DNA from: Octopus sinensis
Lineage: Eukaryota
DNA length: 64,000 bases
Direction of reading: 5' to 3'
NCBI RefSeq assembly: GCF_006345805.1
Contig: NC_043008.1
Coordinates: 72,230,001 to 72,294,000, forward strand
Numbering within the stretch: the stretch's first letter is position 1; each line of letters starts with the position of its first letter. This document shows positions 2,057 to 63,950 of this stretch, one piece after another. Below the pieces are notes generated by a model. It made no database searches. It saw nothing but the letters and a program-made list of their open reading frames with translations, and had not been told where the DNA came from. The position numbers and the translations under genes were made by a program.

Positions 2057-2149
2057 TAATAATATTTACTGAACCTCAGTTTTTTATGCGCGAAACCATT
2101 GGTGTTAAACTGATATTATTAAATTAATATACAGTTTTCACCCTCATTT

Positions 2150-11300: not shown

Positions 11301-11572
11301 CTTTCCAGAACTGGAAACAATTTTAGAAGATAAGCAACTAAAATATTTACAAATTGTCCAGCTACTAAAACTCTAAAGCACGGCAGCACTTTATTTAATA
11401 TTGTAAAAGATCAACAGTGTATATTTTTTTCTATCGGTAATTGAAACAACAAAATAAATCAGTTATACCCTAAATCAGCCCTTCCTCTTATTAATGATAG
11501 CAGTAGTAACTCGTACTGCTCTAGTAATATATTTTGACATTTGCTTTGTTGGTTCCCTGCCAAGATTTATCA

Positions 11573-11599
11573 TCGTCGTCGTCGTCGTCGTCGTCGTCG

Positions 11600-11653
<54 letters not shown>

Positions 11654-11688
11654 GCATCATCATCATCATTCTCATTATTATAATTATA

Positions 11689-11784
<96 letters not shown>
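11573..11784. repeat. Compound (GTC)n-(ATC)n-(ATT)n microsatellite; the (ATT)n part is the tail/target of the adjacent LINE
   Basis: Direct reading. Confidence 0.95.
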
Positions 11785-11785
<1 letters not shown>

Positions 11786-13430: not shown

Positions 13431-13435
13431 AAGTT

Positions 13436-13438
13436 ATC

Positions 13439-13494
<56 letters not shown>

Positions 13495-13558
13495 TATCAT
13501 CACCATCATCATCATCATAACCATCATCATCACCACTATTATTATTATTATTATTATG

Positions 13559-13645
<87 letters not shown>
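13436..13645. repeat. Compound (ATC)n-(ATT)n-(AGT)n microsatellite
   Basis: Direct reading. Confidence 0.95.
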
Positions 13646-13646
<1 letters not shown>

Positions 13647-13855
13647 AGGCGGCAGCTTGCAGAATCGTTAGCACTACGGGTAAAATGCTTAGCGGCATTT
13701 CGTCCGTCTTCACTTTCTGAGTTCAAATTCCGCCGAAGTCCACTTTGCCTTTTATCATTTCGGGGTCGATAAATTAAGCACCAGTGAAACGCTGGGGTCA
13801 ATGTAATCAACTACTCCCCTCCCCACAAACGCTAAGCCTTCTGTAGAAAGGGTTA
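13646..13855 (+). mobile_element. tRNA-derived SINE (octopus-type), copy 1 of a head-to-tail trio
   Basis: A-box-like GCAGAATCGTTAG and B-box GAGTTCAAATTCC; body ttcggggtcgataaa..accagt..ggggtcaatgtaatc recurs more than 10 times in the window. Confidence 0.9.
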
Positions 13856-22901: not shown

Positions 22902-24222
22902 TATATATATCCACACATATATTACCACACACACACACTTACACATATGTGTGCATGCGAGTATGCATTGAAATATTAGTTTGTAAACGCATGAGATACA
23001 TAGTACTCAGTGCATAGTTGAGAGTATGTTGTTTATTCTGAATTGAAGTTTTTGCGTCTCTAGTTTCCCTCCATTATGAACTTTGAAAAAAATGTTTATA
23101 TATATATTTTATATACATAGAAGCGTGCTCATTCTTCTACGTCTATTTTTTTATTGTTTTCTTTTTCTTCTTTTTTCGTAAGGGGTATATATGATAAAGA
23201 TTATTTTTATCTCTGTTTTGTCTTTGGAATTATAGTCATTTTGCTTCTTTTCATTGGCTAATGCACCAGTAGTTTTGCCTCTGTTGCTCGCTTTTGCTCT
23301 TCTATAAAGTTTCTCTGGGATATCGTTCGTTTACTCCGTCAATTAGCGATGTTTTGATTATTGCCACATTGTTACATTTCATTGCTCAAATGGTCGGTTC
23401 ACTAATCTAAACCATTTAGTTTCATTATCATATATATACTTTCTCTAAATAATAATTCTGTTTCTGTCTCCATTGGCTTTGACGAAGTCTATCCTTGGCC
23501 GTTAAATCTTGTTAGTACGTACCCATGACCATTGTATCCAGTATCTTTAAATTATCATTCTTTTCCGGTTAGTTCCTTGGTAATCTTGTTACCTGATTTA
23601 AATAAAATATTACTAGAATGAGTAAGCAGTACCTCCACCACTATCTTTACTAATATTACGATATCAAATATTTACATTTATTTGCATTTCGGGACAAATT
23701 TTTGAAAATTGAATTATTTTGTGTCTGCAATGCGACATCATCTCATACCTTCTAATGAGCAAGCATATTTATTGGGTAACTATATAGTATTTCTATGCGG
23801 TGCATGGAGCAAAGAAACCAGAGCAATTATTCTCAATGTCCTATTTATATTGGCTAGTTATCTGTTGATATGCATAGGGACCTCGAATGAAAGTGAAATT
23901 TGGAAAGGGTGTTACATTCCAGATGCGTATATTACAGAAGATTTGTATATGCTGTGTTGGTGGTGAGTATGTAAGTGTTAAAATTATTCGTATTGAAAGT
24001 GGTGAAGGATTGTAACGATGGTGGTGATGGAAGCGATGATGATAACATTCGTAGCAGAAAGGTTAGTGGTATTGCTTGTACTGCGGGTATTGTTGCTAGT
24101 GACGCTATTGCTATGATAATATGTAATATAAATTTAGTAATGACTACAAGGATAATGCTGTTGGGAGCAATGTCAGAAATGTTCGTTTTAGTCTTAGTAT
24201 TCTTTCTCCTCATAACTATGCT

Positions 24223-24223
<1 letters not shown>

Positions 24224-24262
<39 letters not shown>

Positions 24263-24305
24263 CAACGGTAGCAGCAGCAGCAGTGGCGGTGGTGGTGGTG
24301 GTGGC
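24224..24305. repeat. (TAG)n-(CAG)n-(GGT)n compound microsatellite
   Basis: Direct reading. Confidence 0.9.
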
Positions 24306-24719
24306 GGCTGTAGTTGTAATATTGTAATTATTGTTACAGTCATCCACAGCAACTTCTACGTCGTTGTAATAATCATCATCATCGTCCACTTATTTTTCTT
24401 TTCTCATTATTACCGTTGTTATTGTTGCTATTGTAGTCCAAATATTTATACTATTATTTTTCCGTTTTCCACTTTGGTTGTTTTTCTCCATGCTAATACA
24501 TACGTCGACACACACACACAAACACACACAAACGCACAAACACATACACACACATACACCCACTCACGCACACACATATATATTTACGTATGTACGAAGG
24601 TATGTCTTTATGTCTTTGATTACATGGAATTCAACTTTTCAAAAATATCTTGGAATTATTTCTAAATAGTTTGCTCACCAAAATTCGCATTTAGAACCAG
24701 TAAATGGTTAATTATACAT

Positions 24720-25513: not shown

Positions 25514-25637
25514 CTTCGACCTGACTCGGGTATCACTAGCAGAATTCATCTAGATAGAAGGTTAATACATGTAGCATTAGATAAGCACTAGCTGAGCAAT
25601 GAAGGTCAATGTAATCAACTCGCCCCTCCTGAGAGGA

Positions 25638-25638
25638 C

Positions 25639-25728
<90 letters not shown>

Positions 25729-25796
25729 TATTATTATTATTATTACTATTATTATTATTATTATTATTATTATTATCATCATCATCATTATTATTA

Positions 25797-25832
<36 letters not shown>

Positions 25833-25843
25833 CATCATCATCA

Positions 25844-25880
<37 letters not shown>
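25638..25880. repeat. (ATT)n/(ATC)n microsatellite
   Basis: Direct reading. Confidence 0.95.
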
Positions 25881-25881
<1 letters not shown>

Positions 25882-26115
25882 TACTTCGAGTTTCACTTGA
25901 GAAGGAAAATGCGGGTGGAGAGAGAAGTACTGTCCTTGAGTCAAAGTTGCGAAAATGGCAAGAGTGGATTGTACATCTCTGAGTGTAGACCTGTGAGTCA
26001 GAGAAAGGGAATTGGAAGGAGCACTTGCTCTTGGTGTTCAGAGAGATCTCGGACAATGGTGTGCCTCGATTATCCCTAGAGATCATCATCTATCAGGAGG
26101 GCTATATATCTATCA
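25881..26115 (-). mobile_element. Probable 3' UTR end of a Dong-like LINE
   Basis: GC-richer segment ending on minus in gtgaaactcgaagta directly followed by (AAT)n, the same arrangement as the other LINE ends here. No ORF motif retained. Confidence 0.4.
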
Positions 26116-26376: not shown

Positions 26377-26942
26377 GAGGGTGAGTCAAAAATAATACCA
26401 TTTTGTTTAGAACAGGTATAATTACCAACACAGGAACATATATCATACAGCAAAATGAAGCTGGTGGTCTGTGGATCACATCTCTACTTCTCAACATAGT
26501 CACCGTTTCCTTCTATAGTAATATTCCACCTTCGAATGAGAGCATGCATTCCTGCCCCGTAAAATTCTGTTGACTGTTCTTTGAGCCACTTCTTCAGTAC
26601 AGTTTTCACTTCCTCGTCACTGGCATAATGTTTGCCCCTCAAACCCTCTTTCATGGGGCCGATGAGATGATAGTCTGAAGGCGCTAAATTATTCCAGTGA
26701 CGAGGAAGTGAAAACTGTAGTGAAGAAGTGGCTCAAAGAACAGTCAGCAGAATTTTACGGGACAGGGATACATGCTCTCATTTGAAGGTGGAACATTGCT
26801 AGAGAGAGAAACATTGACTATGTGGAGAGGTATGGATGTGATCCACAGAGGACCAGCTTCATTTTGATGTATGATCCATGTTCCTATGTTGGTAATTATG
26901 CTTATCCTAAACAAAATGGCATTACTTTTTGACTCATCCTCG
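26376..26942. mobile_element. Non-autonomous mariner fold-back element made of two 3' ends
   Basis: TA flanks at both ends; TIR CGAGG(G/A)TGAGTCAAAAA. Arms of about 249 bp (26376-26623 and 26694-26942) each encode SDEEVKTVVKKWLKEQS..FY..GIHALI.RWNI. The 70-bp centre encodes LAPSDYHLIGPMKEGLRGKHYA on minus. Confidence 0.92.
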
Positions 26943-27494
26943 TATATTCATGTATATATGCATGTATACATGTATCATATATATAGACGTATATACATAT
27001 ACACATATATATGTGTGTGTGTGTGTATGTATACATCAACACACACCCATATAGATGCACACATACATTCATATTGTCCAACGAACGGGAACGTGAAACA
27101 CTGAGTAACAATATTTGTGATATCTTTTGTAATATTTCTGCTGCTTTTAATAAAAGATATACATACATACATACTTCCCTGTACTAGTTTAATTAAATTC
27201 TTCCTTACTCGAAAGATACCTATTGTTATGTCCTGTTATTTGTATTTGTGCAACATTCTCCGTATTTTTCTTCCTTGTTTTCGTATACCTTCGCTGTTTT
27301 CTTCCAAGGAATCCAATGCTCTTAGCTTAGTTTTGTTTGGGGCTGGCCAGATTGGAGCAATCTCGAGTATAACCAGCAGAAATTGCAAAGATAATCTGGA
27401 ACTCGACTGAAGAAAGAAAACTTCGAATGACCCGTCCTTGTTTTCTTTGTATCGTCTATCTGGATGGTTTGCGTTCTTGTCCCATTTTGTGTGA

Positions 27495-31069: not shown

Positions 31070-31177
31070 CATTATTTACATTACTAACTTTTGACGGATG
31101 TTTTTCCTCATCTTGTTTTCTGTTAACACAACGTTTCGGCTGATATACCCTCCAGCCTTCATCCAGTGTCTTGGGGC
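31070..31177 (-). mobile_element. Penelope-terminus-like module (family 2) with a degenerate hammerhead
   Basis: Minus strand: GACAC-TGGATGA-AGGCTG gagggtatat CAGCC-GAAACGTT-GTGTT. Homologous to 35488-35690. Confidence 0.7.
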
Positions 31178-31712: not shown

Positions 31713-34700
31713 ATGCGTGGAACATCACGATCATCCCCGACCTCAAACACCATGTACAAAGGAACTACGAAGAAATTAAATGCCACCGATACTATTCAAC
31801 CCAAGAATAACAATCGAGCGGTACGTACATTAAACTTACAACAAAAAATGTACGAAAAACTACACGTGCGAAATAATGTGACAACAGAAATAAACGGACC
31901 GGTACCCTACGAAAATGACGACCGTTAAAATAATGGGCCGGACGTTGTACCTCATGTCCCGCAAATAAAACCCAAAAGACGTAAATGGACACGTGAGGAA
32001 TACATTTCTATCTTACACGCATACTTCACAGCAATGCTCTACCCACAAAATGAAAATACAACAACACATACATATAAAATATGGAAGGAAAATAATAGAG
32101 ATATAGACTTGGATACAGCAATGAACCCTAATAAATTAGCTAACGTACGAAGATACATTCTCAAAGCCAAAAAAATATCAGAAATAGAAATAGAACATTT
32201 AAAAGAAAAAATACACCAGGAAAATGTAGATAGAAGCCACACAACAATGCCCAATAATATAAACACTGAAACTGTAAAACACGAAGACAAACGCAACATT
32301 CCCAACAAACACGATGTAAACAACGAAGGGGAGCCTAATGATTATGATAATATAAAAAATAAAATAATCAAAGAACTGAAAACCACAGAGCCCAAAATGG
32401 ACCACCGACCATACCTCCCAAGAATAAAAATAAACGAAATAACAACACCAATTGTAAACAGCATAAACCTAGCCGTCACTGAACTAGCCACTGAAACAAA
32501 AAAAAATGATGTCACTGAACTAAATGACTTGATATACGCAGCAGCCACTGCAGCCACAAGCTGGATACTCACCCAAACCCGCCCAAACAGGAGTACCACC
32601 ACCCAAACAAAACCTGTGGATAAATAACATCCAAAACAAAATTTAAAAAATTAGAAAAGACCTGTCGATTCTTAATGAAATCAGCAAACAATCAACGCTA
32701 CTGAGCAACAAAAAGAGAACAAAAATGCCCCGCAAAGATAACATCACAGAAAAAGATTTGCCGGAGATAAAAGAAAAGCTGAAGCAAGATATCCTTGCCA
32801 AAGCTCATAGGATCCGCCGGTACGAGAAACGCCAACGCTTCTTTGAACAGAACAAAAAGTTCAACTCCAACCCCAAAAAGTTCTACCAAGAACTGGGAAA
32901 AAATAAAATAGAAGTCACTGCAGCACCAACGACAGAAGAATTGGAAGAATTCTGGAGAGAAATATGGTCGTCGAACGAACAGCCAAAAAAAAGGAGTATC
33001 AAAATAACAAACTCGGCATCTGAACAACTTTGGACCCCCATAACAACTGAAGAGGTCACCCAGGCACTGCAAAAACTAAGCAACTGGAAGGCACCTGGGC
33101 ATGACAAGATCCCCAACTTCTGGTTGAAATATCTAACAGGAATGCACAAAAAGCTGGCTGAAAACTTTAACAGCATACTAGCAGAACCAGAGACAATGCC
33201 TGAATGGCTCACGAAGGGGAAAACCATCTTAATTCCCAAATCAAATGAAACAGCAAAACCAGAAAACTACAGACCAATAACCTGCCTCCCTACTATGTTC
33301 AAGGCATTTACTGCAGTGATATCGCAAAGGCTGAACAAGCACCTGGACGAAAACAAACTGTTCCCAGAAGAGCAGAAAGGATGCCGCAAAGGCTCATAGA
33401 CAGCCACAGAAAGAAGAAAGGCCTCAGTATGGCCTGGATTGACTACAAAAAGGCGTTTGATAGCATCCCCCACACATGGATCCTCGAAACACTAGCCATT
33501 AACAAAGTAGCACCAACAATCATAAAATTCATAGAGCACTCTATGAATAAATGGCAAACAGTCCTACACCGCCAAACAAAAGAGGGACTCATGAAAACCA
33601 AAGACATCCCCATTAGAAGAGGAATATTCCAGGGAAACACGCTCTCTCCACTCCTTTTCTGCTTGGCACTGTCACCTCTATCTGATATGCTAAATAGAAC
33701 TGGATGTGGATATAAATGTTACGGCAAAACGATCAGCCACCTTTTATATATGGATGACCTAAAACTATACGCTGCAAATGACAAACAGCTGGAAACACTA
33801 TTAAAGACAGTTCATGGATTTACCAAAGAAATAGATATGAAATTTGGATTAGCAAATGCGCCAAAGTAACCATGAAAAGAGGAAAACTAGTTAAGAGTAA
33901 CAACATCACACTAGATAAAACCAATGAAATAAAAGAATTAGACCAAAGCCAAACTTACAAATACTTAGGAATCCATGAACTAGATAAGACACAACACACA
34001 CAAATGAAAGAGAAAATAAAAAAAGAATATTATAGATGAGTTAGATCAATACTAAACACAGAGCTCAATGCCAAAAACTAGATAATAGGTATCAACACCT
34101 TAGCTGTCCCAGTTATAAGTTACAGCTACAATATCCTTAACTGGACACGAAATGAACTGACCAAAATAGATAGGAAAACAAGAAAAATACTGGCAGGATC
34201 TAGGATGCATCACCCAAAATCTGACATAGAAAGACTATATATACAACGTATAGAAGGTGGTAGAGGCCTTATACAGCTGGAAAACTACTATAAAATAACC
34301 ACCATAGGACTGCAAAAATATCTACTTCAGAAAGAAGGAAAACTGATCCAGATAGCAGCAAAACACGAGCAAAACAAAAAACTGTTCTCAGTATTTAAGG
34401 AAGCTGACAAATACAAACAAGAAATCATACCACCTAATAAACATGAAGAAGAAGAAGAAGAAGAAGAAGAAGAAGAAGAAGAAGAAGAAGAAGAAGAAGA
34501 AGAAGAAGAAGAAGAAGAAGAAGAAACAACAAAAGCTATAAAACAAATGAAATCCAAACTAAAAATAGAACAGCAACGAACCATGATAAAACGATGGCAC
34601 GAAAAGCCCCTAAGAAAAATCCCAGCAATGGTTGAGAAGCTCAGGACTCAAAGCAGAAACAGAGGGATTTTTAATTGCAGCACAAGACCAAAGCCTCCCC

Positions 34701-35318
34701 ACCAGAAATTACCAAAAACATGTAATGAAAAGAAATATTACATGTAACTGCAGAATATGTGGAGATGGACAAGAAACAATAAATCATATTATCTCTAGCT
34801 GCCCAGTCCTGGCTAAGAAGGAATATATTCACAGACATGACAGAGTTGGAACCTACATACATTGGAAGCTATGCCAACATTATGGAATAACAACAGAAAA
34901 AAGATGGTATAGGCACACACCAGAAAAGGTCACAGAAAACCAGAAAGCAACTATACTCTGGGATATGCCGATACACACAGATAGAGAAATTAAGGCCAAC
35001 AGACCAGATATAGTTGTCAGAGATCATGAAGAAAAAAAATGCTTTCTAATTGATGTATCAATACCGGCAGATGACAACGTGTCTCTAAAAGAAATGGAGA
35101 AACTCTCAAAATACAAAGACCTGGAAATAGAGGTAACTAGAATGTGGAATCTGAAAACAGAAACAATTCCTATCATAGTAGGTGCATTAGGCATGATAAA
35201 AAAATATTCAGACAAATACATAACAAAAACACTAGGACTTACAAACACATATAACATACAGAAAATTGCATTACTAGGCACTGCACACATCCTACGCAGA
35301 ACACTTTCCATACAATAA
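31713..35318 (+). pseudogene. Disrupted RT-RLE polyprotein ORF (about 1200 codons) of the Dong-like element
   Basis: ORF-track pieces 31713-31928, 32034-32627, 32725-33399, 33381-33869, 34205-34747 and 34632-35318 tile one polyprotein. There are frameshifts, in-frame stops and small deletions near 33397 and 34611. Confidence 0.93.
34445..34525 (+). repeat. (GAA)27 in-frame expansion (poly-Glu) inside the LINE ORF
   Basis: 81 bp counted; absent from the related copy near 44610. Confidence 0.95.
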
Positions 35319-35488: not shown

Positions 35489-35690
35489 TGGAAAAAACCT
35501 TAGGAATGAGAACCCAGGTTCAAAATTTCCCTAAGTCACCTGATAAAGGCTGGAGGATGTATCAGCCGAAACGTTGCGTTAACAACAAACAAGATGACGA
35601 CAAATATCCGTCAAATGTAAATAATGTAAATAATGTGAATAACATACATGATTCGTCATCTCTTATATATAGAACTGTATTAAAGATACT
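35488..35690 (+). mobile_element. Penelope-terminus-like module (family 2) with a degenerate hammerhead
   Basis: GTCAC-CTGATAA-AGGCTG gaggatgtat CAGCC-GAAACGTT-GCGTT at 35535-35580. The downstream tail matches 12190-12278 in reverse complement. Confidence 0.72.
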
Positions 35691-43118: not shown

Positions 43119-43504
43119 TCAGTAGTTTTATTTTTATAGCGTGCTTTCACTTCACTACCGAGCGCAGCTCTGTGTGCCTTGGGTATGTGCTGTGATTTGT
43201 TGTGATGCTCTGATGGTTATTGTATGGAAAGTGTTCTGCGTAGGATGTGTGCAGTGCCTAGTAGTGCAATTTTCTGTATGTTATATGTGTTTGTAGGTCC
43301 TGGTGTTTTTGTTATGTATTTGTCTGAATATTTTTTTATCATGCCTAATGCACCTAGGAATTGTTTCTGTTTTTAGATTCCACATTCTGGTTATTTCTAT
43401 TTCCAGGTCTTTGTATTTTGAAAGTTTCTCCATTTCTTTTAGAGACACGTTGTCATCTGCTGGTATTGATACATCAATTAGAAAGCATTTTTTTCTTCGT
43501 GGTC
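43119..43504 (-). mobile_element. Young 5'-truncated copy (last ~385 bp) of the same subfamily as 31311-35416
   Basis: KKCFLIDVSIPADDNVSLKEMEKLSKYKDLEI and the 3' UTR are nearly identical to 35030-35416. Trinucleotide repeats lie on both sides. Confidence 0.95.
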
Positions 43505-43531
43505 TTATTATTATTACTATTATTATTATTA

Positions 43532-43579
<48 letters not shown>

Positions 43580-43639
43580 TATTATTATTATTATTATTAT
43601 TATCATTATTATTAGTATTATGATTATTATTATTATTAT

Positions 43640-44368
43640 TCCTTCGTAACACAGTGTAGTTAAAAATGCACCGGAAACTTTAGTCATCTATCAAGTAACA
43701 ACGAGGATCTCAGACAGGTAATACTTTCCTTAAATGTGCGCTGTGCCCAATAGGGCTCCTTTTTACAAGACATCAATCTTGCGTGGGATTTCCGGTTGCC
43801 TCAAGCAGTCTTAAAGTTTCAATGGGATTGAGCCCAATGCTCCTATCGCCACTGGTATCACTTTTACATCACCCTCTCGCATTCCATACAATCTTGCCAT
43901 TTCCACTTTCAATTCGGAGTACTTGGTGATTTTTTCAGCCTCTTTACTCACAGTATACATGTCATTTGCTATGACTTCGTCAATGATCTGACTGTATTTG
44001 TTTCACTTATTCAATATTACAATATCCGGCCGACGTTGTTCGATTACGCGATCCGTCTGAAAATTATAGTCCCAGAGTATCGTTACTTTTCTATCCTCTG
44101 ACATATCTTTACTTGGTACATGGTCATACCAGTTCTCTGTTACTTCCTATTGGTACTTACAACATAAGAGCCAATGAAGATACAAACAGACTTCATCGTG
44201 ACGGCGCTTGTATTCTTTTTGTGCAATTCTCTCACATCCACTTACAAAGTGGGTCACATTTTCCACACTCTTTCAACAGAGCCTGCATTTTTGTGTGTTA
44301 GAGGTTTTATAGATGTTATACTTCACTGACGTGGTAGCGAGAGCCTGGTCTTGTGCAGCAATAATCAG
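43640..44368 (-). mobile_element. Dong-like LINE 3' fragment of a different lineage
   Basis: LIIAAQDQALAT, KCRLC, KEYKRRHDEV, RRPDIVILN, KITKYSEL and IPVAIGALGSIP; its own 3' UTR is followed by (AAT)n. Confidence 0.88.
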
Positions 44369-46150
44369 GTAATTTCTTGTAGGAAGGCTTTGATTTTGTG
44401 CTGCAATTAAGAATACTTCAGTTTCTGCTTTGAGTTCTAAGTTTCTAAGCCATTTTTGCTGGAATTTTGCTTTGTCTATTTCTTTTCTGCTTATTTTAAC
44501 CTAGTATTTGCCACGAAGGGGCTTTTCTTAACATCGTTTTATTATGATCCAATTTGTTTCAATTTTAGTTTGGATATCAGTTGTTCTATAGATTTCGTTG
44601 TTGCTTCTTTTTCTCCTTGTTAGGTACTATAACTACATTTTGTATTTGTCAGCTTCCTTAAAAACAGAAAACGGTTATTTTGTTTTGTTCGTGTTTTGTG
44701 GCTATTTGTATTAGTGTTCTTCTGAAGTAGGTATTCCTCTAGTCCTCTAGTGGTTATTTTGTAATAATTTTCTAGCTGTATAAGGACTCTTCCCTCTAGC
44801 ACCTTCCATACGTTGTATATATAACCTTTCTATGTCAGATTTGGGTGGTGCATCCTAAATCCTGTCATTATTTTCCTAGTTTTCCTGTCTATTTTGATTA
44901 GTTCATTTAGAGTCCAGTTCAGAATAATATAGATGTAACTTATAAATGGGATGGGTAGAGCGTTGATACCTATTATCTTGCTTTATTTTCATTGAGCTTT
45001 GTTTTTAGTGTTAAGCTAACTCGTCTATAGTATTCTTTTCTTACTTTCTCTTTCATTTACGCGTGTGTTGTATTGTATGTCAGGCTTTGGTTTAATTCTC
45101 TTATTTCATTTGCTTTATCTAACGTGACGTTGCTTCTGTTAACTGTTTTCCTCTTTTCAATGTTGCTTTGGCACAAGCCTAATTTCATGTTTATTTCTTT
45201 GGTAAATCCATGTATTGTCTGTAGTGATGTTTCCGTACAGTTTTAGGTCATCCATATATATGAGGTGGCTGATTGTTTTGCTGTAACAGCTGTATTCACA
45301 TCCTGTTCTGATTAGCATGTCAGATAAAGGTATCAGAGCCAACCAGAAAAGGCGTGGAGAGAGCGTGTTTCCCTGGAATATTCTTCTTCTAGTGGGGATG
45401 GCTTTGATTTTTATTTGTCCCTCTTTTGTCTGGAGCTGTAGCATAGTCTGACATTTTTCATGGAATGTTTTATATATTTTATGATTATTGGTGCTATTTT
45501 GTTCATGGCTAGTGTTTCTGGGATCTGTGTGTGGGGAATACAATCAAAAGCCTTTCGGTAATCGATCCAGGCCGTACATAGACACTTCTTCTTTCTGTGG
45601 CTGTTTACAGGTATGGCTTTATTGATTTTTAGTTGATCTTTACAACCTTATAAGCCTTTGCAGCATCCCTTCTGCTCTTCTGGAAACAGGTTATTTTCTT
45701 CCAGACGTTTGCTCATTCTCTGCGATATTATTGCAGAAACGGCTTTGTAAATTACATTGAGACACTTTATCGGTCTGTAATTGTGTGGGCTTCACGTTTC
45801 AGTGGATTTGGGAATTAGGATAGTTTTCCCTTCCATGAGCTATCAGGCATTGCCTCTGTCTCTATTAGTATTTCCTTAAATTTCTCAACTAGCTTTGTAT
45901 GTGTTCTTGTTAGGTATTTTAACTAAAAGTTGGGGATCTTGTCGTACCCGGGTGCCTTCCAGTTGCTTAGAGCCTGGATGACTTCTTCAGTTGTTATGGG
46001 GATCCAGAGTTATTCAGGTGCTGTATTCGTTATTTTAATAAACCTTTGCTGAGGTTGTTCCTCCACCGACCATATTTCTTTCCAAAATTCTTCCACTTCT
46101 GCTGTTGGTCCTGCTTTGGTCTCTAGTGGAACGTGTAGATTTTGAACGTT
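44369..46150 (-). mobile_element. Older Dong-like fragment (RT region) related to 31311-35416
   Basis: EVEEFWKEIWS, IFQGNTLSPRLF, HLIYMDDLKLYG, MLEGRVLIQLENYYKITT and FLIAAQNQSLPTRNY. Confidence 0.9.
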
Positions 46151-49464: not shown

Positions 49465-49926
49465 TTTATATGTATGTATATATATGTGTGTGTGTGTGTA
49501 TCAGTTTAATGCTCTTGTATTCAATAATGACTAGTCTGTCGATTGTTTTTATTTGATTCACTTATGTGCGTGTGTGTGTATGTTTGTGATGTGTATTTAA
49601 TTGGATGTAGCCCAATATGTACGTACTCGGATATAGTGCAACACTTTTAATGAGTATTAAATATTTGAGCGTAGTCCAGCGCCTTGTCAGCGTGGCGAAC
49701 GTGTTTACACGTATTGTGCGAGTGACGGAAGTAATAGACACTCAAAATACATCGTTTCATGCGGAAAGCAGAAATAAATTTTCATGAATATTACTTACTC
49801 GGATATACTGCAACACTTAGTTATTTAATTTAGACTCCATTTGTTGTCTTTATTCACGATTTGTTTTTTTCTTTGACAGATTTCGGATCAGTGTTTTATT
49901 TCTCTCACATGTTCAACGTCCCCGGT

Positions 49927-50785
<859 letters not shown>

Positions 50786-51019
50786 ATTATTATTATTATT
50801 GTTGTTGTTGTTGTTGTTGTTGTTGCTGCTGCTGCTGTTGTTGTTGTTGTTGTTGTTGTTATAAAATCGTACTAAATCGGCTTCTTTTTCTAGGTATGAC
50901 GGATTGTGTCAGCTGCCCACAACCAGCACACACAAATATGACACTTGTTTACCGATCATGCTTCAAGAACCCTGCGGAGAACTCATGCAATTTCAAGCAA
51001 TCATGATTTTTATAGGTCT

Positions 51020-51300
51020 TCTAACTTTATATTTGTTCTAATCTTTTTGAGCCACGTTCGTATTTAGTGTTGATATTTCCAAGCGCTCCAATCACTATTG
51101 GCGTCACGTCCACTTTCTTCATTGCCTACAACCTGCGTGTTTTCACACTTCAATTTATCTTTGTTGTTCACTTTTCTTTACTTTCTTCAATCCTACTAAT
51201 ACCAGGAAATGCTACATCAATAAACAGGCATATTCTTCTTTTCAGTTCTCCACAATATTTCCGATGTTTAAACCAACGGTCACAGTGAATCATTGCATCC
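51020..51300 (-). mobile_element. Degenerate Dong-like RLE fragment
   Basis: Reverse complement of NMCLFIDVAFPG and the V.P.VIGALG-type C-terminal motif. Confidence 0.65.
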
Positions 51301-51415
51301 CACAGAGTAGGCCAATCCTTATTCCCAGTAACTCTTGCTAATTAGACATATCACATTTTGTATTCACGTTATGCTAATTTCGGGCCTTCACTAACAATGT
51401 ACCACAGTGGTTTTA

Positions 51416-51459
<44 letters not shown>

Positions 51460-51461
<2 letters not shown>

Positions 51462-52385
51462 TTCATCATTTCACCACTTCTGTTTTGACAAGCTTTCCTC
51501 GTCTCGTCAGTATCGTAGCACATTTTGAGAGTCCAATCTCCATCTTAATATCATTGGAGAAAATCCGCACAGACTGAACTAGGCTGTCTAGCTCTCCCTC
51601 AGTTTTTGCGAATAGCTTCTGGTCCTCCATGGATATCAAGTGGTTTAGTTTTCTCTTACTTCTTCCCAGATCATACCCCCAACTTTGTTTTCCTCTCTTG
51701 ATTTTCACCTCTCCTAGCACTTACTTCCCTGCTGCTGTCAATTCCGTTCTCCAGTATTTCATGTTATTCTAAATAATGCTTCTCATAGTCTCTCTTACTC
51801 CAGACATTTCCATTGTTCTTATTATCCAAGACTGCGGTATCATATCATATGCTTTGCGATAGTCAACCCATGCCATATTAGGCTTGTATGTCTTCTCTTG
51901 CAGTTCCTGATAATTAGATTATGAATTAAGAGCTGATTTTACCTTCTCCGGCACCTTTCTCGGCACTCCTTCTGTTCAGTGGGTAGTAGCCCACTTTTTC
52001 TCAAGTATTTGTACAGTTCACTGGCCAAAGCACCTGACACTAGTTTCCACATTAGCGGAAGGCATATTATTGGTTTAAAGTTGAATGCAACATTTTCCTT
52101 TCCAGGATCCTTGGTACCTAACAATGTATTTCCGTTTGTCATCCGACTGGGTACGGTGCCTTCCTTCAAGCACTCATCTAGCTGTTGTGCAATCCTTTAA
52201 TGGAGTCCTCTTCTTCATCCAATACCCTTGGACTCCCTCCGGTCCTGGGCTCTTTCAACTTGGGAATTTTCTTCACTGCTTTTTTTTATCATTTCTGTAG
52301 TTATCTTTATGTCTTCTTGGACTTCTATATTTCTTAACCTATCCTGGATTTCATGCAACCACTCCGCTTTATCATTATGCTATAA
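51460..52385 (-). mobile_element. Dong-like RT fragment
   Basis: HNDKAEWL, FKPIICLPLMWKLVSG, LPTEQKECR, LGEVKIKRG, KLNHLISMEDQKLFAK and GLSKCA; bounded by (TAG)n at 51418-51458. Confidence 0.88.
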
Positions 52386-52399
52386 TAATTATTATTATT

Positions 52400-55200
52400 C
52401 TGCATAACTGTCGGACAGTTCTTGATTACCAGTTATCCTTTACTTGAAACAAAGCAATAACAAATCGCCAAAGGTTTCAAGAAGTGCCTTCTCCTGTGAC
52501 TCAAAAAGACAATAGAATGCGAGCTGTGTACGCAACAATACTGTCTTCTGGATCACCTCGAGCCTGACAGCAGCTCCAATATACTTAATGTTTTTCAAAA
52601 CCCTTGGAAACTGCTCCTAATGCTCCGTTACTTTCCCCATGCACCATAACTTTCCATTCTCGTCCCGCAGTGGTTGGTATTACTCAATATTTTCGGTTTC
52701 CTAGAATAGCCTGGTATTGCAACATCTATTATCTTTACTCCTTTTTCATCTTTATCGACGAGCACAATATTTGGTCGTCTCGCCTTTATGACTTGGTCGC
52801 TCTGCTTGTTTGCTTTACCACGCAACAGCAAGTGGACATATCTGGCCACATAGTCGTTTCTCCTTTTGTATTCGTGTTGTGCAAGCCTACAGCACTCACT
52901 AACAATATGGCTTTTACTTTCTCCCTTCTCAGAGCACATTGTACACTGTGGCGAGTCAGGGCTTTTACAAATGTGACATTTGGAGCAGTTTGTTCTGAGG
53001 GCTTGTTCTTAAGCGCTGCACACTAATGCCTCAGTGGGCCTTTTTAAATCTCCTTTCAGCAGTCATTGCCAGGTTCTATTCCAATCAATCTCATCTTTAT
53101 TCTTCAAGACCTGACTCTGCATTTTCTTGTCCTGCATTTGCTCTCTCTCTGGTCTTTCTGAAATTGTGTTGGATGTACGGCTTCCTTCACTTTTAAGGTT
53201 TCCTACATTTTCACTGCTTCAGTGATTTCTTTTTTACGCCCTTTGACATACCATGCCAGGCTATTCTCCTCTTTCCTAACACAACCTTACATAATTCCCG
53301 TCCTCTTTCTTTCTTCTTTACATACAATCTTGAAATATCATCTTGAGGTGTTGTTCATTGCTCATTGTCGTTAATTTACGCGTTCTCTGGTCTATCTCTT
53401 GTAATTCAGACTTCTTCCAAGATATTATTCCTGCCCCATACCTCATCAAAGGAACCGCCCACATTTTACTTGCTTTAATCTTATAGCGGCCATTTAACGT
53501 CGATTGGAGCACAAGCCAACTTCTCAAATACTCTTTCCTGTACATTTCTTTCATCTTGTGTTCATTCGTCTTATCTCTTTCGATGATACCCAGGTACTTA
53601 TATCCTTCCTCTCCGAAATCCTTTATAGTTTCACCACTTACCAACTTGATCCCATGACTTTTACTGATTTTTCCCCTTTTGCAAATCATTACATCACATT
53701 TATCGATCCCAGATTCCATGCTAAACATCTTTGCTAATCATCTGCACAGTTGCTGTCAAACCCTCAATTTCTTTCTCAGCCTTAGCGAATAGCTTTAGGT
53801 CATCCATAATCCACATGTTGTTTAAATTCACTCTGCATGTATGTATCCCACGCGCATCATCCTTAAAACGTTGGTTAGTAGCAGTATGCAGACAACAAAT
53901 AGGAGAGGCGATAGACTGGCCCTTTGGAAGATTCGTCTTTTGATATTTACCTCTCCCAGCTTATCTCCCCATGCTGAGAGTTCAGTTCGCCACGTTGTCA
54001 TTGGGTTTTGTATTAACTCCAGGATATTGTGGGAGACCTTAATCAGTTTAAGACATTCAATGTTCCACTAGTGTGGCACCCTGTCATATGTTTTCTTGTA
54101 GTCCACCCATGCCATCGCCAAATTGTTGTGTCTCTTCTTGCAGTCAGCCAGGAAAGTCTTATCGATTAGTAATTGATCCCTCATTCCCCTGCTCTTACAT
54201 CTACACCTTTTTTCCACTAGTAGCAAGTCGTTCTCATCTAGGTACTTATAGATGCTGTTTGATATGATGCCTGTCATCATTTTCCATATCAGTGACAAAC
54301 AAGATATTGGCCGGAAATGTCCAACCGCATCCCCTTTTCTTGGGTCCTTCTGGCATACTACAGTTCTTCCTTTTGTCATCCAGGCCTGTACTTGGGTGTC
54401 CCTACTCAGTATTTCGTCCATCTGTCTCGCAATTATTTTGTGCAGAAGTGTCAAGGTTTTAAGCCAATAGCCCTGAATCCCATCTGGGTCAGTCTCTTTC
54501 TAGTTAGGAATTTCCTCCACTGGTCTCTAATCATCTCCTCGGTTATTCTCAAATCCTCCCGCTGATACTGTCTATAACCACTCTGCTTCAGTTTCTCTTG
54601 ACACCATATGTTTGACCAGAATCTTTTACTTTCCTCAGCATCCGGCACAGCCTTTTCGCTTTTTTTTTCCTATCCGGTTCCAAACTAGTTTCTGATTTTG
54701 TTCGAAAAGCCTGTTTAATCTATACTTCTCAATTCTTCTCTGTTCATATCTCTGTAGCTTTCAACCTCTGTTTTAATTCCTCAGTCACAACATTGATTCG
54801 CCTTCTCTTCACCACCTCTCTATACTTCCTCTCTAGCTCAACATATTTCTCTCGCTGAAATTCATTTCTTTTTTCCGTTCCAGAATATTAATATGTTTTC
54901 TGGTCTCGTTAACAGACTGCGTTATTCTTCCTTTCCAACATCGTTCCTTCAGGTTATCTTGACATTTACCTTTGGCTTTCAAACCTAACTCCTGGGCTAT
55001 AAAGATCGAGATTGCATTTATCAGATTGTTGGTGTCTGTGATGTTGTCAGTCCTGATATCACCAGGGATATCATTTATCTTCCTGACCCGTTCATTGAGT
55101 TTCTCTTTGTCTACTTTTGAACCACGTATGAAATCTCTGTTCACAAGACATCCAATTATCTGTGATTTTATTATTGTTGTTAATGATGACACAATTTTAT
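52400..55200 (-). mobile_element. Long degenerate Dong-like LINE (N-terminus, RT, CCHC, RLE, 3' UTR)
   Basis: ORF pieces 54833-55204, 54451-54648 (PDAEESKRFWSNIW), 54068-54454 (FRPISCLSLIWK, AWVDYKKTYDRVPH), 53318-53728 (GYKYLGI) and 52628-52939 (SHIVSEC, YKRRNDYV, RRPNIVLVD, IIDVAIPG). A short degenerate AAT tail lies at about 52381-52399. Confidence 0.92.
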
Positions 55201-55339
55201 ACAAAATCTTGAAATTTCAAAATTTTGAAATTTCACCTGAAGTAAAAGTAAGCTGTACGTTTTGCAGCAAGTGTTATTTATGAGTAAGATAGGCATATTT
55301 CATGGAAAAGATCCCATATACTATACATTAAATATTTTC

Positions 55340-55675: not shown

Positions 55676-57378
55676 AAATATAAATATTACTATTATTGCC
55701 TCTGTGAGTGTGCATACGGGATTGCCTGAGCGCATGCATTTCTTGTAAGTACGTGTGTGTATATATATGTGTGTGCGTTTGTGCATGTGTGTGTGTGTGT
55801 ATGTGTGTATGTGTTTGTGTGTCTGTTTGTAATTGTAATATATTCATAATTATAACAAAGGTTTGGCTATACGCCTCTCCACGCGCTAGAAAATAAACGC
55901 CAAAAGACACTAAAACGACCTTAACAACTCCGAAAACTAAAACACGGGCTGTAGTCAAGCAAAGGAAAGATAATGAATTAAAATCATGGTTAAATGTGTA
56001 GAAGATCCCGTTTCAAGCTTAAGGTAAAGAAATTATACTCTTGGTAAAATCATTAATGATGTTTGCCCTTTATTATAATATATATGTGTGTGTGTATGTG
56101 TATCTATATATATGTGTGTGTGTATACATAAATCTATGTGTGCATGTCATGTATGGATACAGAGAAAGAGAGAGAGGGTGAGAGACAGATTTGTGTGTGT
56201 ATGTCACAATTCAAAGCGTAAACATTTAACGATTTATATCTAAATACATTTTTGGTTCTTAATAGTACACAAACATATATATATATATATATATAAGGGT
56301 ATGACTGTGTGTTGGGTGCACGTGTGTGGAGGGCTGTGTGTGTGTGTGTATGTATGTATGTACGTCTACATATGTATGTATTTTTGTGTCTTCTCTTTTC
56401 AAGCATATTATTTGAAAATAAACAGTATTCTCTTGAAATTCTAAGAGACAATTGTCTATAGTTAATAGTCACCAAATATATATTCACTCTGAAGAAATAA
56501 ATAAGTGTATTGTTGTTGAATGTTGCCAAAAGCAATGTGAAGACATTACTTTTCTTTACTTTTTGACAATTTCAAGGAATACAGTATACCCATACGCATG
56601 CATACGCACGCACAGGCGCGCACACACACCGACACACGTACAGACACACATACGCGCACATACGCACTGATATTACACTATAGCAGCTCATTAACATGTA
56701 TCTCGTTTTCTTTAAGCTGCAAAATACCTTTACAAAGAACCATTTGGTTTCTGACTAAAATATTCGACCAAAATAATAAAATGAAATAAATCTGGGACAG
56801 AATTGTAGAGAACATAATCAGGTCTCGAAGAAAACTCTTGTGCGTTTTGTGAAGATTCTTCAGTTATATTTCATGTTTTGTTTGGAATTTTTCCGATTCT
56901 CAAGATGGAGGATTCTGTATTACTTAAAACTCACCAAATGCAAACGCGAATAACTACTGATGCTATCAATCCTTACTAGTGCATACAGACAGACCCACAT
57001 ACAGATAGTTAGATGGGTAACGGTAGATAGATAAATAGGACTAAGATAAACATATATAGATACACGCTCATATATGTATCTATAATCACATGCATATGTG
57101 TGTGAGTGTTTATGTGCATGTTTTATGTAAAAATTGTGTACAAGTATATGTATGTGTGTTATTTTCATGTTTAGAACTGTACATACATTTTTATAAACCA
57201 GCCTGATTTCTGCATTGTTGTTAATGAACTACTATATTGAGTAGTATTACGAGTTATGTGTTACAGAGATAAAGTAGAAAAAATAAGGATAAACACAAAT
57301 TTATGTTAAGTGCATACATTTCTCTCACTATAGTGGATGGCTGTAGTCTGGCAACAAATAATCCAATTGCATAAAGAA

Positions 57379-57475
57379 GCTCAACTTCAACGGATCCTCA
57401 TGGAACACTTTATTGCATCGTTATAAACGGACTTGATACAATAAAGGGTTCCTTAAGGATTCATCGTAATTGAAC
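57379..57475 (-). ncRNA. Candidate pri-miRNA-like hairpin, not a family I recognise
   Basis: On minus: a 41-position unbulged stem with 31 Watson-Crick pairs, 6 G-U pairs and 4 mismatches, and a 15-nt loop, in unique non-TE DNA. Confidence 0.45.
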
Positions 57476-58188
57476 AGCTATATGCATTTGGAACTTATAT
57501 CACAGAGCTTCAATTAACTTTCTTGGTGAAACGCGCGTAGGAACTTTAATACTAAGTTGCATTTCTCCTCTGATTTCTCTTTGCCGTTTTATTTTTAAAC
57601 ATTCTTGATACGGATGCAATATTTCAATAGGAATTTGCGTAAATTAAGAATTATCAATTATATTAAAAATTATTTTAAAAAGCATATTTTATGTAAATTT
57701 TGTTTTCTGTTATCTGTAATTTGCTGTTTTCAGTTTTTCAAAAAGGTAAGTTTGTGTTGAGACAGTTATTTTTAGCAGCAATGTCGATTATTTCTGGTTT
57801 AGTGTCCGATTAAAAATCATGTTATTCTTCCTTTTGAATTCATAATTGATTATTTCTCTGCCTTTATTTTGCTAAAAGGGAATATACTTTTAGGGAACGC
57901 TTTCCAACTTTCTTGTCAAGAAACACATTTAATTATTTTAATCTAAGGAAAATAAGAAACCTAATCCTTAGGCATAAATTTATGAATATATATGTGAGTA
58001 TTTTTGAGTATGTGAATATGTGCAAGATTGGCGAATATATATAGCACCGTGTGGACAATACAACAGAACACACAAACACATACATATACATGCACGCACA
58101 CACGCAAACATACGGTATCATATAGTATATATACAGAGATATTTTCATGTGCAATATCATCATCTTCATTATCATTCTACTCCATCAC

Positions 58189-61003: not shown

Positions 61004-63128
61004 TCTGAATGAAAGAAATTATTTAAATTATGTGCAGTAGATAAATTATGGTTCAAAATGTGCTAAAATCGAAAACTGTGTGCCGCCAATACCGTTTTTT
61101 AATTATTATATCTATGCTCTCTATATTGGAAAATAATAGTATAATTAAGACTTATTAAGAGGTCTGTGTGAAAATACGCGTCAACATGGTATTATAGAAA
61201 CACCTCATGACGCCAAAACGATAATAAAATTTGATAGTGAATATTAATAAATATTGTGACATTAAACGTTTTGTAAACAAACTTTAAAATTTCTGAGAAT
61301 AAAAACTTTTGCATAACACTTGCTTTCAAACATTGATCCGATTCAGTCAAGGTCTCCTCTCGATTTATTTCTACCTAAATATGTCGACAGTGCAGGTATT
61401 TTGGAATATAATATTGCACAAAATAAACATTTTCCGATTTTCCAATAGTTTGAAAATGTATGTATTTAATAAAAACGTATGTGGAGTACGGGTCATATGG
61501 GCGAAGATATCAGGTTTGGCTGTGACTTTAATGTAAAAGCAGTGGTGTTAGGTGCAACGTTATATATAAATGTAATTTTCATATTCATTCAATTTTAATA
61601 ACCAAGACGAGATTTCAGCATTTTCATTCAAATTTCTTTAAATGCCAAGAATACTTAAGAATAAGATTATCCTAAGATTTTAGCATACATATAAATAGGC
61701 TACTTTGCGCCTCTTTGAAATAAAGATTTATTTCATAATTGTTAAGCAAAGATTAGTTTTCTGTATTTATTTTCAAGCTAAACAGTAAAAATTAATAGTA
61801 AAAATTAATAATTTCAATAATAGATGAAACGCTGAAGCACCAAATTTAGGAGTTTGATTATATTAGAAATAATTAATCAAACATAGGAAAATTTGATAAA
61901 TATTGGACATGGGAATTGAAAAGTATTATTGTTATATATATCACATGGGAAGTATTTGTTTTTCTAAATGATTCTTAAAATTATTGTTTTAATTTGTATA
62001 TCAATAGAATCAAGAAAAACTTCAAAATGAACTTTGTGCATTAAAGTTTTAAGAATTGTTTTCGGTTTTGGCAATGTGTTATTTTATACCATTTGTTTTG
62101 CAAAGTTTTACAGCCATTTTTCTCCTCGTTTTTATCACTCTCATCCTGATCATCACTATTAGATGCAGTAAAGACAGCAAAGATGTGAGCAAGGGAGATG
62201 CCAAGCGCCATCGCAAGGGTCTACGTGACAACTATGGGATCAGGAAGTTTGCTATCTGTTGCTTGGATTGCCACGATAACGTCAAGCACATGATGTATTC
62301 GAGCATTCTTTGTGCGAATGTTAACGAAATCATACCCACTTTGTCTCAAACAGACCGATTCATATTTGCTGTAGTATTTGCTTCGCTGGCTTCATTCAAT
62401 TCCTTTATTGCTGATTTACTGTCATTATTCTTTCCCCTCAGATTCCTCAATGCCGTTTTTAATGATTTTCTTTTGGTCAATTTATTAAAATTTACTTTCT
62501 GATTAATTTAAAATTTTGAAATATATTGATATGATTTTGATTTTATAATTTTTTGAGTTTTGTCTCGATAAAAATTATTTTCTGTCTGTAAAAAGTTTTG
62601 CATATTAAAAGAGTAAGTTAAAATTTAAAAAATACCGACGCAGGAGCAAAGCTATTCTTAATTAACATGGACAAGTACTGGGCAAGAAAGACTAGAAATT
62701 TATAATATGGCAGCTGAACGTATTTGAACTTCATATGCTTTCACAAAGAGAGGGAGAGAGGGAGAGACAAAGACACAGAGACAGAGACACAGACACAGAG
62801 ACAGAGACAGACAGACAGTCAGACAGACACAGAGAGAACCAAGGAAAAGAGAAAGAAAAACCATGGTGTCCTGAGGCGGCATGATAATAATGGGATTAAA
62901 TATTAAAAAGTCACTTTTTTTCACCCCTATCGCCTCCTCGTGTGCATGTCTAACTGAGATTATAACCCATGGTTTGTACTGAGACTGAGAAAGATATATA
63001 TGTGATTTAAGGGAGGAACAGTGTTAAGGGGAAAGTTTTAAGGCATCATGTGGCTGAGAATGTTGGATTCATAGAGCTTCGTGAATCTTTGTCTTTACTG
63101 AGGAATAATTTTCTTTTCTATTTCTTAG

Positions 63129-63732: not shown

Positions 63733-63950
63733 TCTTTTACTCTTTTACTCTTTTCAGTCATTTGACTGCGGCCATGCTGGAGCACCGCCTTTAATCGAGC
63801 AACTCGACCCCGGGATTTATTCTTTTGTAAGCCCAGTACTTATTCTATCAGTCTCTCTTGCCGAACCGCTAAGTAACGGGGACATAAACGCACCAGTATC
63901 GGTTGTCAACCGATGGTGGGGGGACAAACACAGACACACAAATACATACA
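63733..63950 (-). mobile_element. Octopus-type SINE with an RTE-like 3' tail
   Basis: Minus strand ends aaggcggtgctccagcatggccgcagtcaaatgactgaaaagagtaaaagagtaaaaga. The copy looks young and intact. Confidence 0.9.

What the first reader, a model, noticed from the sequence alone, without database searches (positions are those of the whole stretch)
57379..57475. Strand-asymmetric pri-miRNA-like hairpin: candidate lineage-specific microRNA
Seen: positions 57379-57419 pair with 57475-57435 with no bulges. Six positions are C/A mismatches on plus but G-U pairs on minus, leaving 4 mismatches in 41 on minus versus 9 on plus; this asymmetry is what RNA-level selection would produce and a DNA fold-back would not. 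The loop is 15 nt, the DNA is unique, and a CNNC (CUUC) starts at 57379 on minus. Inferred duplex if that CNNC sits about 17 nt from the Drosha cut: 5p UAAGGAACCCUUUAUUGUAUCA (57455-57434) and 3p AUGCAAUAAAGUGUUCCAUGAG (57418-57397). Neither matches a conserved family I recall (5p differs from miR-124 in the seed). No basal UG or apical UGU was seen. Established: coleoid cephalopods have a large expansion of novel miRNA families.
Basis: partly seen in the sequence, partly recalled or inferred. Interest (0 to 1): 0.7.

Follow-up and report, generated by a model that had tools for sequence, protein, structure and literature searches.

The report
Lone imperfect hairpin, microRNA status unproven
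The hairpin is real and folds much better as RNA on the minus strand, but it is most likely an old, decaying inverted repeat in transposon-rich DNA, and nothing available here shows that it makes a microRNA.

Summary
Bases 57379-57419 pair with 57475-57435 without bulges: 31 Watson-Crick pairs, plus 6 G-U on the minus strand against 1 on the plus strand. RNA MFE is -42.7 (minus) versus -27.4 kcal/mol (plus), and the loop is 15 nt.

The asymmetry argument is weak. 6 of 7 transitions favouring one strand gives p = 0.125. Neutral decay of a perfect palindrome reaches the same energy gap in 6% of simulations. A hairpin at 12239-12350, built from LINE-tail repeats, shows a 12.6 kcal/mol gap the other way. 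The window holds six complex inverted repeats of this class, about one per 10 kb, so the prior for any one being a miRNA is very low.

No Rfam family matches. None of the 12 central seed registers tested matches an annotated octopus miRNA target 8-mer. The UG and CNNC motifs imply Drosha cuts 7 nt apart. No second copy exists in the window.

Expression, conservation and genome-wide copy number could not be tested, and the organism could not be verified.

Verdict: probably a decayed inverted repeat (about 0.65); bona fide miRNA about 0.07. Low interest.

The parts
57435..57475 (-).
   Evidence: Pairs position by position with 57379-57419: 31 WC, 6 G-U and 4 mismatches on the minus strand
57420..57434 (-). 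15-nt terminal loop
   Evidence: Unpaired in the minus-strand MFE and centroid structures
57379..57419 (-). 3' arm of the core hairpin on the minus strand; contains the proposed 3p species (57418-57397) and the CUUC starting at 57379
57476..57513 (-). A 2x2 internal loop at 57476-57477 is followed by further helix. A UG lies at 57476-57475.
   Evidence: In-register pairing listed; 186-nt minus-strand fold -69.6 kcal/mol with outermost pair 57513/57341
57341..57378 (-). Outer 3' extension of the stem, partner of 57476-57513
   Evidence: Differences between the arms rise from the loop outward: 1, 2, 3, 4, 3, 3, 6, 5 per 10 positions

Best explanation
This is an old inverted repeat about 173 bp long (57341-57513), lying in transposon- and microsatellite-rich non-coding DNA. 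It arose at the DNA level, either as a one-off inverted duplication or as a palindromic foldback/MITE-type insertion, and has since accumulated substitutions. That origin is inferred, not shown. The arms differ at 10 of the 41 core positions: 7 transitions and 3 transversions. Every transition in a palindrome leaves a G-U on one strand and a C/A on the other. Here 6 of 7 happened to fall so that the minus-strand RNA keeps pairing, which makes that strand look selected. On this reading the hairpin has no dedicated RNA function. If it lies in a transcript it would simply form a long double-stranded RNA stem.
For: (1) Base rate. The window has six complex, ungapped inverted repeats with 41-nt arms and at least 29 WC pairs, about one per 10 kb. 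Five of them fold to -39 kcal/mol or better on at least one strand.

(2) At least three of the other five are transposon-associated. 1950-2044 and 2394-2479 lie beside a Tc3-type transposase remnant (below Pfam's cutoff). 12239-12350 is built from LINE-tail repeat copies that recur at 31071-31148, 35560-35677 and 50458-50502, next to a zf-RVT fragment.

(3) The asymmetry is within neutral expectation. The binomial for 6 of 7 is p = 0.125 two-sided. In 1500 simulated neutral decays of the perfect palindrome with 10 substitutions, a strand gap of at least 15.3 kcal/mol occurred in 6%, and a best strand at or below -42.7 in 48%. The LINE-derived hairpin at 12239-12350 has a 12.6 kcal/mol gap favouring the other strand.

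(4) The transition:transversion ratio of 7:3 is what neutral change gives (my inference).

(5) The stem is 58 positions in register and about 78 in total, with no single-stranded basal junction, against a canonical 30-35 bp (PMC12553114).

(6) No Rfam family matches at gathering score or at E<=10, and no tested seed register matches an annotated octopus miRNA.

(7) The surroundings are LINE fragments and microsatellites, and I recognised no host exon among the window's open frames (only some frames were put through Pfam).
Against: No second copy of either arm or of the flanks 56700-58100 exists in the 64-kb window, so a multi-copy transposon origin is not shown, and no target-site duplication is visible.

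The asymmetry sits in the upper 6% of the neutral simulation. It rises to 8 of 9 (p about 0.04, my arithmetic) if the outer stem to 57355/57499 is included.

Regional strand composition does not explain it. The flanks are G+T-rich on the plus strand (0.52-0.57), while the hairpin is G+T-poor there (0.456).

There is no indel across 58 positions despite about 25-30% arm divergence.

An inverted repeat is also exactly how new miRNA genes are born, so this explanation and a young miRNA are not mutually exclusive.
Confidence: 0.65

Rival explanations
1. A young, lineage-specific canonical microRNA gene transcribed from the minus strand. On this reading Drosha and Dicer excise a duplex of about 22 nt from the upper stem, for example 5p 57455-57434 and 3p 57418-57397. 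Selection on the RNA fold has then kept transitions that preserve G-U pairing.
For: The hairpin meets the structural criterion of at least 16 paired bases, and it is imperfect, with a 15-nt loop (criteria from PMC12539619). On the minus strand the MFEI is 1.15 and the ensemble diversity is low at 1.9, against 0.74 and 8.4 on the plus strand. G-U counts are 6:1, or 8:1 with the outer stem. Local strand composition does not explain the asymmetry. The sequence is unique in the window. Octopuses have 90 novel miRNA families, and the authors say more species-specific ones are likely to be missing from their count (PMC9699675). Long hairpins are tolerated in invertebrates (PMC12553114).
Against: No expression or conservation evidence could be obtained. 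The asymmetry is not significant and a transposon-built hairpin mimics it. The lower stem continues about 35 bp beyond where a basal junction should be. UG at 57476 implies a 5p start near 57462, while CNNC at 57379 implies 57455, so the two are inconsistent, and there is no apical UGU in either register. No Rfam match exists. None of the 12 seed registers appears among annotated octopus miRNA target 8-mers, and GTTCCTT is labelled 'Non-seed kmer'. The prior is roughly 1 in 1000 from the hairpin density and 164 genes per genome.
Confidence: 0.07
2. The repeat lies inside a longer transcript, either intronic or non-coding, and forms a double-stranded RNA stem of about 75 bp. That stem would be used non-specifically, either diced into heterogeneous endo-siRNAs like a small hpRNA or edited by ADAR, rather than acting as a precise miRNA precursor.
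For: The stem is long and nearly continuous at 58-78 bp, which is more siRNA-hairpin-like than miRNA-like. Cephalopod nervous tissue has heavy A-to-I editing, which needs such duplexes (PMC9699675 abstract). The minus-strand fold is strong and well defined.
Against: Nothing shows that the region is transcribed on either strand. I recognised no host exon among the window's open frames, and the one plausible ORF nearby is a decayed histone-H4-like sequence on the other strand. Known hpRNAs have stems of several hundred bp (my knowledge).
Confidence: 0.13

Closest known systems
Canonical animal pri-miRNA hairpin (MirGeneDB-type gene)
   Same: Imperfect stem-loop with far more than 16 paired bases, only 1x1 mismatches, a 15-nt loop, a strong and unambiguous fold on one strand, and geometry that permits a 22-nt duplex with 2-nt overhangs.
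   Different: The stem is 58-78 bp instead of 30-35 bp, and no single-stranded basal segments exist (PMC12553114). Processing motifs are in inconsistent registers. There is no read evidence, no ortholog and no family match.
Novel coleoid/octopus miRNA families (Zolotarov et al. 2022, PMC9699675)
   Same: These are single-copy hairpins scattered through a repeat-rich genome and restricted to one lineage.
   Different: Those families were accepted only with reads and presence in two octopus species. None of the 12 seed registers of this hairpin is among their target 8-mers as stored. The source organism of the window could not be verified.
Palindromic MITE / foldback transposon remnants, including MITE-derived miRNA loci such as human mir-548 from Made1 (my knowledge)
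   Same: The element consists almost entirely of two inverted arms and a short loop, and it sits in transposon-rich DNA beside other transposon-linked hairpins.
   Different: There is no second copy in 64 kb and no recognisable target-site duplication. Copy number in the genome is unknown.
Long invertebrate miRNA hairpins (Javad-zada et al. 2025, PMC12553114)
   Same: These are invertebrate hairpins with stems much longer than 35 bp that are highly base-paired.
   Different: In those cases a conserved miRNA/star pair is known, and the extra length lies between the two. Here no mature species is known at all.

Membership tests
Animal microRNA gene (MirGeneDB criteria, PMC12539619) | Imperfect hairpin precursor with at least 16 paired nucleotides in the stem | tested here: met
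   37 of 41 positions are paired on the minus strand (31 WC + 6 G-U), with 4 single mismatches and a 15-nt loop
Animal microRNA gene (MirGeneDB criteria, PMC12539619) | Small-RNA reads from both arms | not testable with these tools
   No small-RNA data are accessible
Animal microRNA gene (MirGeneDB criteria, PMC12539619) | Homogeneous 5' ends of the mature reads | not testable with these tools
   No small-RNA data are accessible
Animal microRNA gene (MirGeneDB criteria, PMC12539619) | 2-nt 3' offsets left by Drosha and Dicer | not testable with these tools
Animal microRNA gene (canonical Microprocessor substrate) | Stem of about 30-35 bp bounded by a single-stranded basal junction (PMC12553114 abstract) | tested here: not met
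   The helix runs 58 positions in register and about 78 in all, interrupted only by a 2x2 loop at 57377-78/57476-77 and a 2-nt bulge. Long stems are tolerated in some invertebrate miRNAs, so this lowers the miRNA reading but does not exclude it.
Animal microRNA gene (canonical Microprocessor substrate) | Auxiliary motifs (basal UG, apical UGU/GUG, downstream CNNC) in one consistent register | tested here: not met
   UG at 57476 implies a 5p start near 57462, while CNNC at 57379 implies 57455. No UGU or GUG lies at the apical junction in either register. These motifs are helpful but not obligatory.
Known miRNA family (Rfam 15; octopus MirGeneDB set via PMC9699675) | Sequence/structure match to a family model, or a shared seed | tested here: not met
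   No Rfam hit at gathering score in the window and none at E<=10 on the hairpin. The 12 seed registers are absent from the stored Data S3, and GTTCCTT is labelled a non-seed k-mer in Data S2. The stored files are truncated, so this is not exhaustive.
Novel cephalopod miRNA family (criterion of PMC9699675) | Presence and expression in a second species | not testable with these tools
   Every route to orthologous DNA failed
MITE / foldback transposon | Multiple dispersed copies in the genome | tested here: inconclusive
   There is no other copy in the 64-kb window.
MITE / foldback transposon | Terminal inverted repeats flanked by a target-site duplication | tested here: inconclusive
   Inverted arms are present by definition. 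I saw no direct repeat at 57341/57513 by eye, but an element this diverged would have lost a short one.
hpRNA / endo-siRNA hairpin | Long, near-perfect inverted repeat that yields about 21-nt siRNAs along its length | tested here: inconclusive
   The stem of about 78 bp is much shorter than known hpRNAs (my knowledge), and reads are not testable

The most novel reading that the evidence does not exclude
The hairpin is a newly born, species-restricted small-RNA gene (a miRNA or a short hpRNA) caught soon after an inverted duplication. In that case the 6:1 to 8:1 excess of G-U-preserving transitions on the minus strand, and the better-preserved upper stem, would be the first traces of RNA-level selection.
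Probability: 0.1. Interest if true: 0.35.

Novelty: already known. Interest (0 to 1): 0.15.

Why it matters
If it were a real miRNA, it would add one more lineage-specific gene to a cephalopod expansion that is already documented with 90 novel families, which would be a modest gain.

The more useful result is methodological. In a repeat-rich, AT-rich genome, a difference in G-U pairing between the two strands of a single hairpin does not reliably indicate RNA-level selection. Here a hairpin assembled from LINE tails shows nearly the same asymmetry, and neutral decay produces it in about 6% of cases. With about one such hairpin per 10 kb, sequence-only calls of this kind will be mostly false positives.

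Tried and rejected
- Rfam, whole window at gathering score and 57000-57900 at E<=10: nothing on the hairpin. The weak mir-3149, mir-1277 and mir-297 hits at 57028-57194 fall on (TG/TA) low-complexity DNA far below gathering scores.
- A miRNA cluster on the minus strand: the asymmetric minus-strand hairpins at about 59381 and 59911 are (TA)n(TG)n microsatellites, so I rejected this.
- Copies in the window: none.
- Metagenome scan with an 18-mer that matches either arm: 58 loci, all single-arm chance matches of 18-22 nt.
- Two-arm pattern in genome contigs and viral contigs: 0 hits.
- Full-text literature search for the arm strings: only a coincidental HIV primer.
- Zolotarov et al. supplements: arm strings absent, but miR-124 and let-7 controls are absent too, so those files are not sequence lists. 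I used seed 8-mers instead.
- Host gene or orthologous locus. The ORF at 62056-62502 has no length-matched homolog. The exhaustive search shows only a 40-residue histone-H4-like stretch. The flanking ORF 56923-57228 has no homolog. Six exact look-ups of window ORFs found nothing.
- Organism. The closest LINE ORF relatives are unnamed contigs from Logan SRR7158634 (90%), NCBI GCA_024449705.1 (82%) and ENA ERZ23326556 (83%). The two sequence accessions I searched are not in the literature, and the clusters carry no names. A SINE-like string from 63.77 kb is not in any paper.
- Regional strand mutational bias as the cause of the asymmetry: rejected, because the flanks lean the opposite way.

Full report
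**The observation.** The sequence is as described. In the register i+j=114854, bases 57379-57419 face 57475-57435 at 41 positions without a bulge. There are 31 Watson-Crick pairs. Six positions are C/A on the plus strand and therefore G-U on the minus strand. One position is G-T on plus and therefore A/C on minus. Three are mismatched on both strands. As RNA the minus strand folds to -42.7 kcal/mol (z = -9.1; MFE structure 53% of the ensemble), and the plus strand to -27.4 (z = -4.9). With DNA parameters the strands are equal, at -16.2 and -15.3, so the asymmetry is specific to RNA wobble pairing. The loop is 15 nt, CUUC starts at 57379 on the minus strand, and the proposed 5p/3p pair has the right 2-nt offsets by geometry.

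The helix does not stop at 57379/57475. After a 2x2 internal loop it continues in the same register to about 57355/57499, and after a 2-nt bulge to 57341/57513. The 186-nt minus-strand fold is -69.6 kcal/mol, against -47.9 for plus. The stem is therefore 58 positions in register and about 78 in all, with no single-stranded basal junction. Canonical miRNA hairpins have stems of 30-35 bp (PMC12553114). Differences between the arms rise from the loop outward: 1, 2, 3, 4, 3, 3, 6, 5 per 10 positions.

**How unusual the hairpin is in this window.** Across 6391 windows of 97 nt on both strands, the mean MFE is -14.2 and the first percentile is -36.8. Most of the extreme and strand-asymmetric folds are (TA)n/(TG)n microsatellites, including two on the minus strand at about 59.4 and 59.9 kb that at first suggested a cluster. 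An ungapped scan (41-nt arms, at least 29 WC pairs, loops of 3-40 nt) gives 39 loci, of which six are complex sequence: 1950, 2394, 3967, 12239, 26601 and 57379. That is about one per 10 kb.

**The other hairpins.** At least three of the other five are transposon-linked. The two near-perfect palindromes at 1.9-2.5 kb lie beside a Tc3-type transposase remnant (28.5 bits, below the cutoff). The 12239-12350 hairpin is made of copies of a repeat that recurs at 31071-31148, 35560-35677 and 50458-50502, which is the tail of the window's LINE elements. The 26.6-kb hairpin sits in a 204-nt inverted duplication at 87% identity. The candidate alone has no other copy, in its arms or in its flanks 56700-58100.

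**Whether the asymmetry shows selection.** Every transition in a palindrome creates G-U on one strand and C/A on the other, so under neutrality each is a coin toss.
- Six of seven gives p = 0.125 two-sided. Eight of nine, if the outer stem to 57355/57499 is included, gives about 0.04 (my arithmetic).
- I simulated neutral decay of the reconstructed perfect 41-bp palindrome with 10 substitutions at a transition fraction of 0.67-0.70. A gap between strands of at least 15.3 kcal/mol occurred in 6% of 1500 runs, and the better strand reached -42.7 or lower in 48%.
- The LINE-derived hairpin at 12239-12350 has a 12.6 kcal/mol gap, -52.3 on plus and -39.7 on minus. No one would attribute that to miRNA selection.
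- Because the candidate was picked out for its asymmetry, these values do not reach significance.
The flanks are G+T-rich on the plus strand (0.52-0.57) and the hairpin is G+T-poor there (0.456).

**Known families and motifs.** No Rfam family reaches gathering score anywhere in the window, and none reaches E<=10 on the hairpin. The held supplements of Zolotarov et al. 2022 contain target 8-mers rather than miRNA sequences. I therefore tested six seed registers on each arm. The UG at 57476 would place the 5p start near 57462, while the CNNC at 57379 places it at 57455. The two disagree by 7 nt, and no UGU or GUG sits at the apical junction. Each motif is short enough to be there by chance.

**Context.** The window is AT-rich (about 34% G+C) and full of microsatellites and LINE reverse-transcriptase fragments at about 32-35 kb (+), 43-46 kb (-) and 50-55 kb (-). 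I recognised no host exon among its open frames (only some were put through Pfam). The only plausible ORF near the hairpin, 62056-62502 (+), has no Pfam domain and no length-matched homolog. The exhaustive search shows only a 40-residue stretch resembling the histone H4 N-terminus. It looks like a decayed H4-derived sequence, and it lies on the opposite strand.

**The organism.** I could not verify the source organism. The nearest relatives of the LINE ORF are unnamed contigs, and the next-best named hits are from echinoderms and cnidarians at about 55-63% identity.

**Conservation, copy number and expression.** None of these could be tested. The metagenome scan gave only chance 18-22-nt matches. 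The two-arm pattern gave no hit in the genome or viral collections. Exact and homology look-ups of flanking ORFs found nothing, and the literature holds none of the arm strings.

**Weighing.** At five or six such hairpins per 64 kb, a genome of a few gigabases (my knowledge for octopuses) would hold on the order of 10^5 of them, against 164 annotated miRNA genes. That is a prior of roughly 1 in 1000, perhaps 1 in 100 if unannotated species-specific loci are allowed for. The asymmetry and the apparent single-copy status raise the odds several-fold. The over-long stem, inconsistent motifs and lack of any family match lower them. My estimates are:
- about 0.65 for a functionless decayed inverted repeat;
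- about 0.13 for a transcribed double-stranded stem used non-specifically (siRNAs or editing);
- about 0.07 for a bona fide miRNA;
- the remainder unassigned.

The structural criterion for a miRNA is met. The defining criteria of reads from both arms, 5' homogeneity and 2-nt offsets (PMC12539619), and presence in a second species (PMC9699675), remain untested.

Noticed in passing
window 62056-62502 (+): A 148-aa ORF with two hydrophobic stretches. Residues about 38-78 resemble the histone H4 N-terminal region (about 54% identity over 40 aa; E 7e-6 to 8e-4 against 1.84 billion representatives). It has no Pfam domain and no length-matched homolog. It is probably a decayed H4-derived pseudogene that happens to stay open.
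   Followed up: partly
window 12239-12350: An imperfect hairpin (36 of 41 WC pairs) assembled from two inverted copies of a LINE-tail repeat that recurs at 31071-31148, 35560-35677 and 50458-50502. It is strand-asymmetric (-52.3 on plus, -39.7 on minus) and served as the internal negative control for the G-U asymmetry argument.
   Followed up: yes
window 1941-2057 and 2381-2497: Two perfect or near-perfect palindromes of complex sequence (117-nt folds of -99.6 and -90.2 kcal/mol, symmetric between strands). They lie 400-900 bp from a Tc3-type transposase HTH remnant at 3123-3335 (-) (Pfam E 1.9e-6, below the cutoff). They look like young foldback or TIR structures.
   Followed up: partly
window 26557-26760 (and ORF pieces 26385-26570 +, 26747-26947 -): A 204-nt inverted duplication at 87% identity that forms a -62 kcal/mol hairpin. 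The peptide at 26487-26732 (-) reads like the C-terminal end of a mariner-type transposase to my eye, but Pfam gave no hit.
   Followed up: partly
window 31929-35318 (+), 43281-45650 (-), 50232-55216 (-): Three LINE-type retrotransposon copies or fragments with RVT_1 and zf-RVT domains. The 228-aa C-terminal ORF at 34632-35318 has 640 relatives at E<=1e-10. The named ones are from echinoderms and cnidarians (about 55-63% identity), and the closest (82-90%) are unnamed contigs.
   Followed up: partly
window 57028-57194: Weak Rfam hits to mir-3149, mir-1277, mir-297, mir-5879 and others (15-27 bits against gathering scores of 49-100) fall on (TG/TA)-type low-complexity DNA just upstream of the finding. 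They are compositional artefacts, not miRNA evidence.
   Followed up: yes
window 63760-63920: A relatively G+C-rich unit flanked by (TA)n runs that looks like a SINE-type repeat. I recall similar strings from octopus genomes, but the literature search for it found nothing, so this stays an unverified lead to the organism.
   Followed up: partly
window 11475-11949, 13388-13810, 24216-24662, 25599-25982, 49861-50226: Long trinucleotide and other microsatellite tracts that produce 110-150-aa 'ORFs' of poly-I, poly-N/D, poly-L or poly-Y. They are mechanical ORFs only.
   Followed up: no
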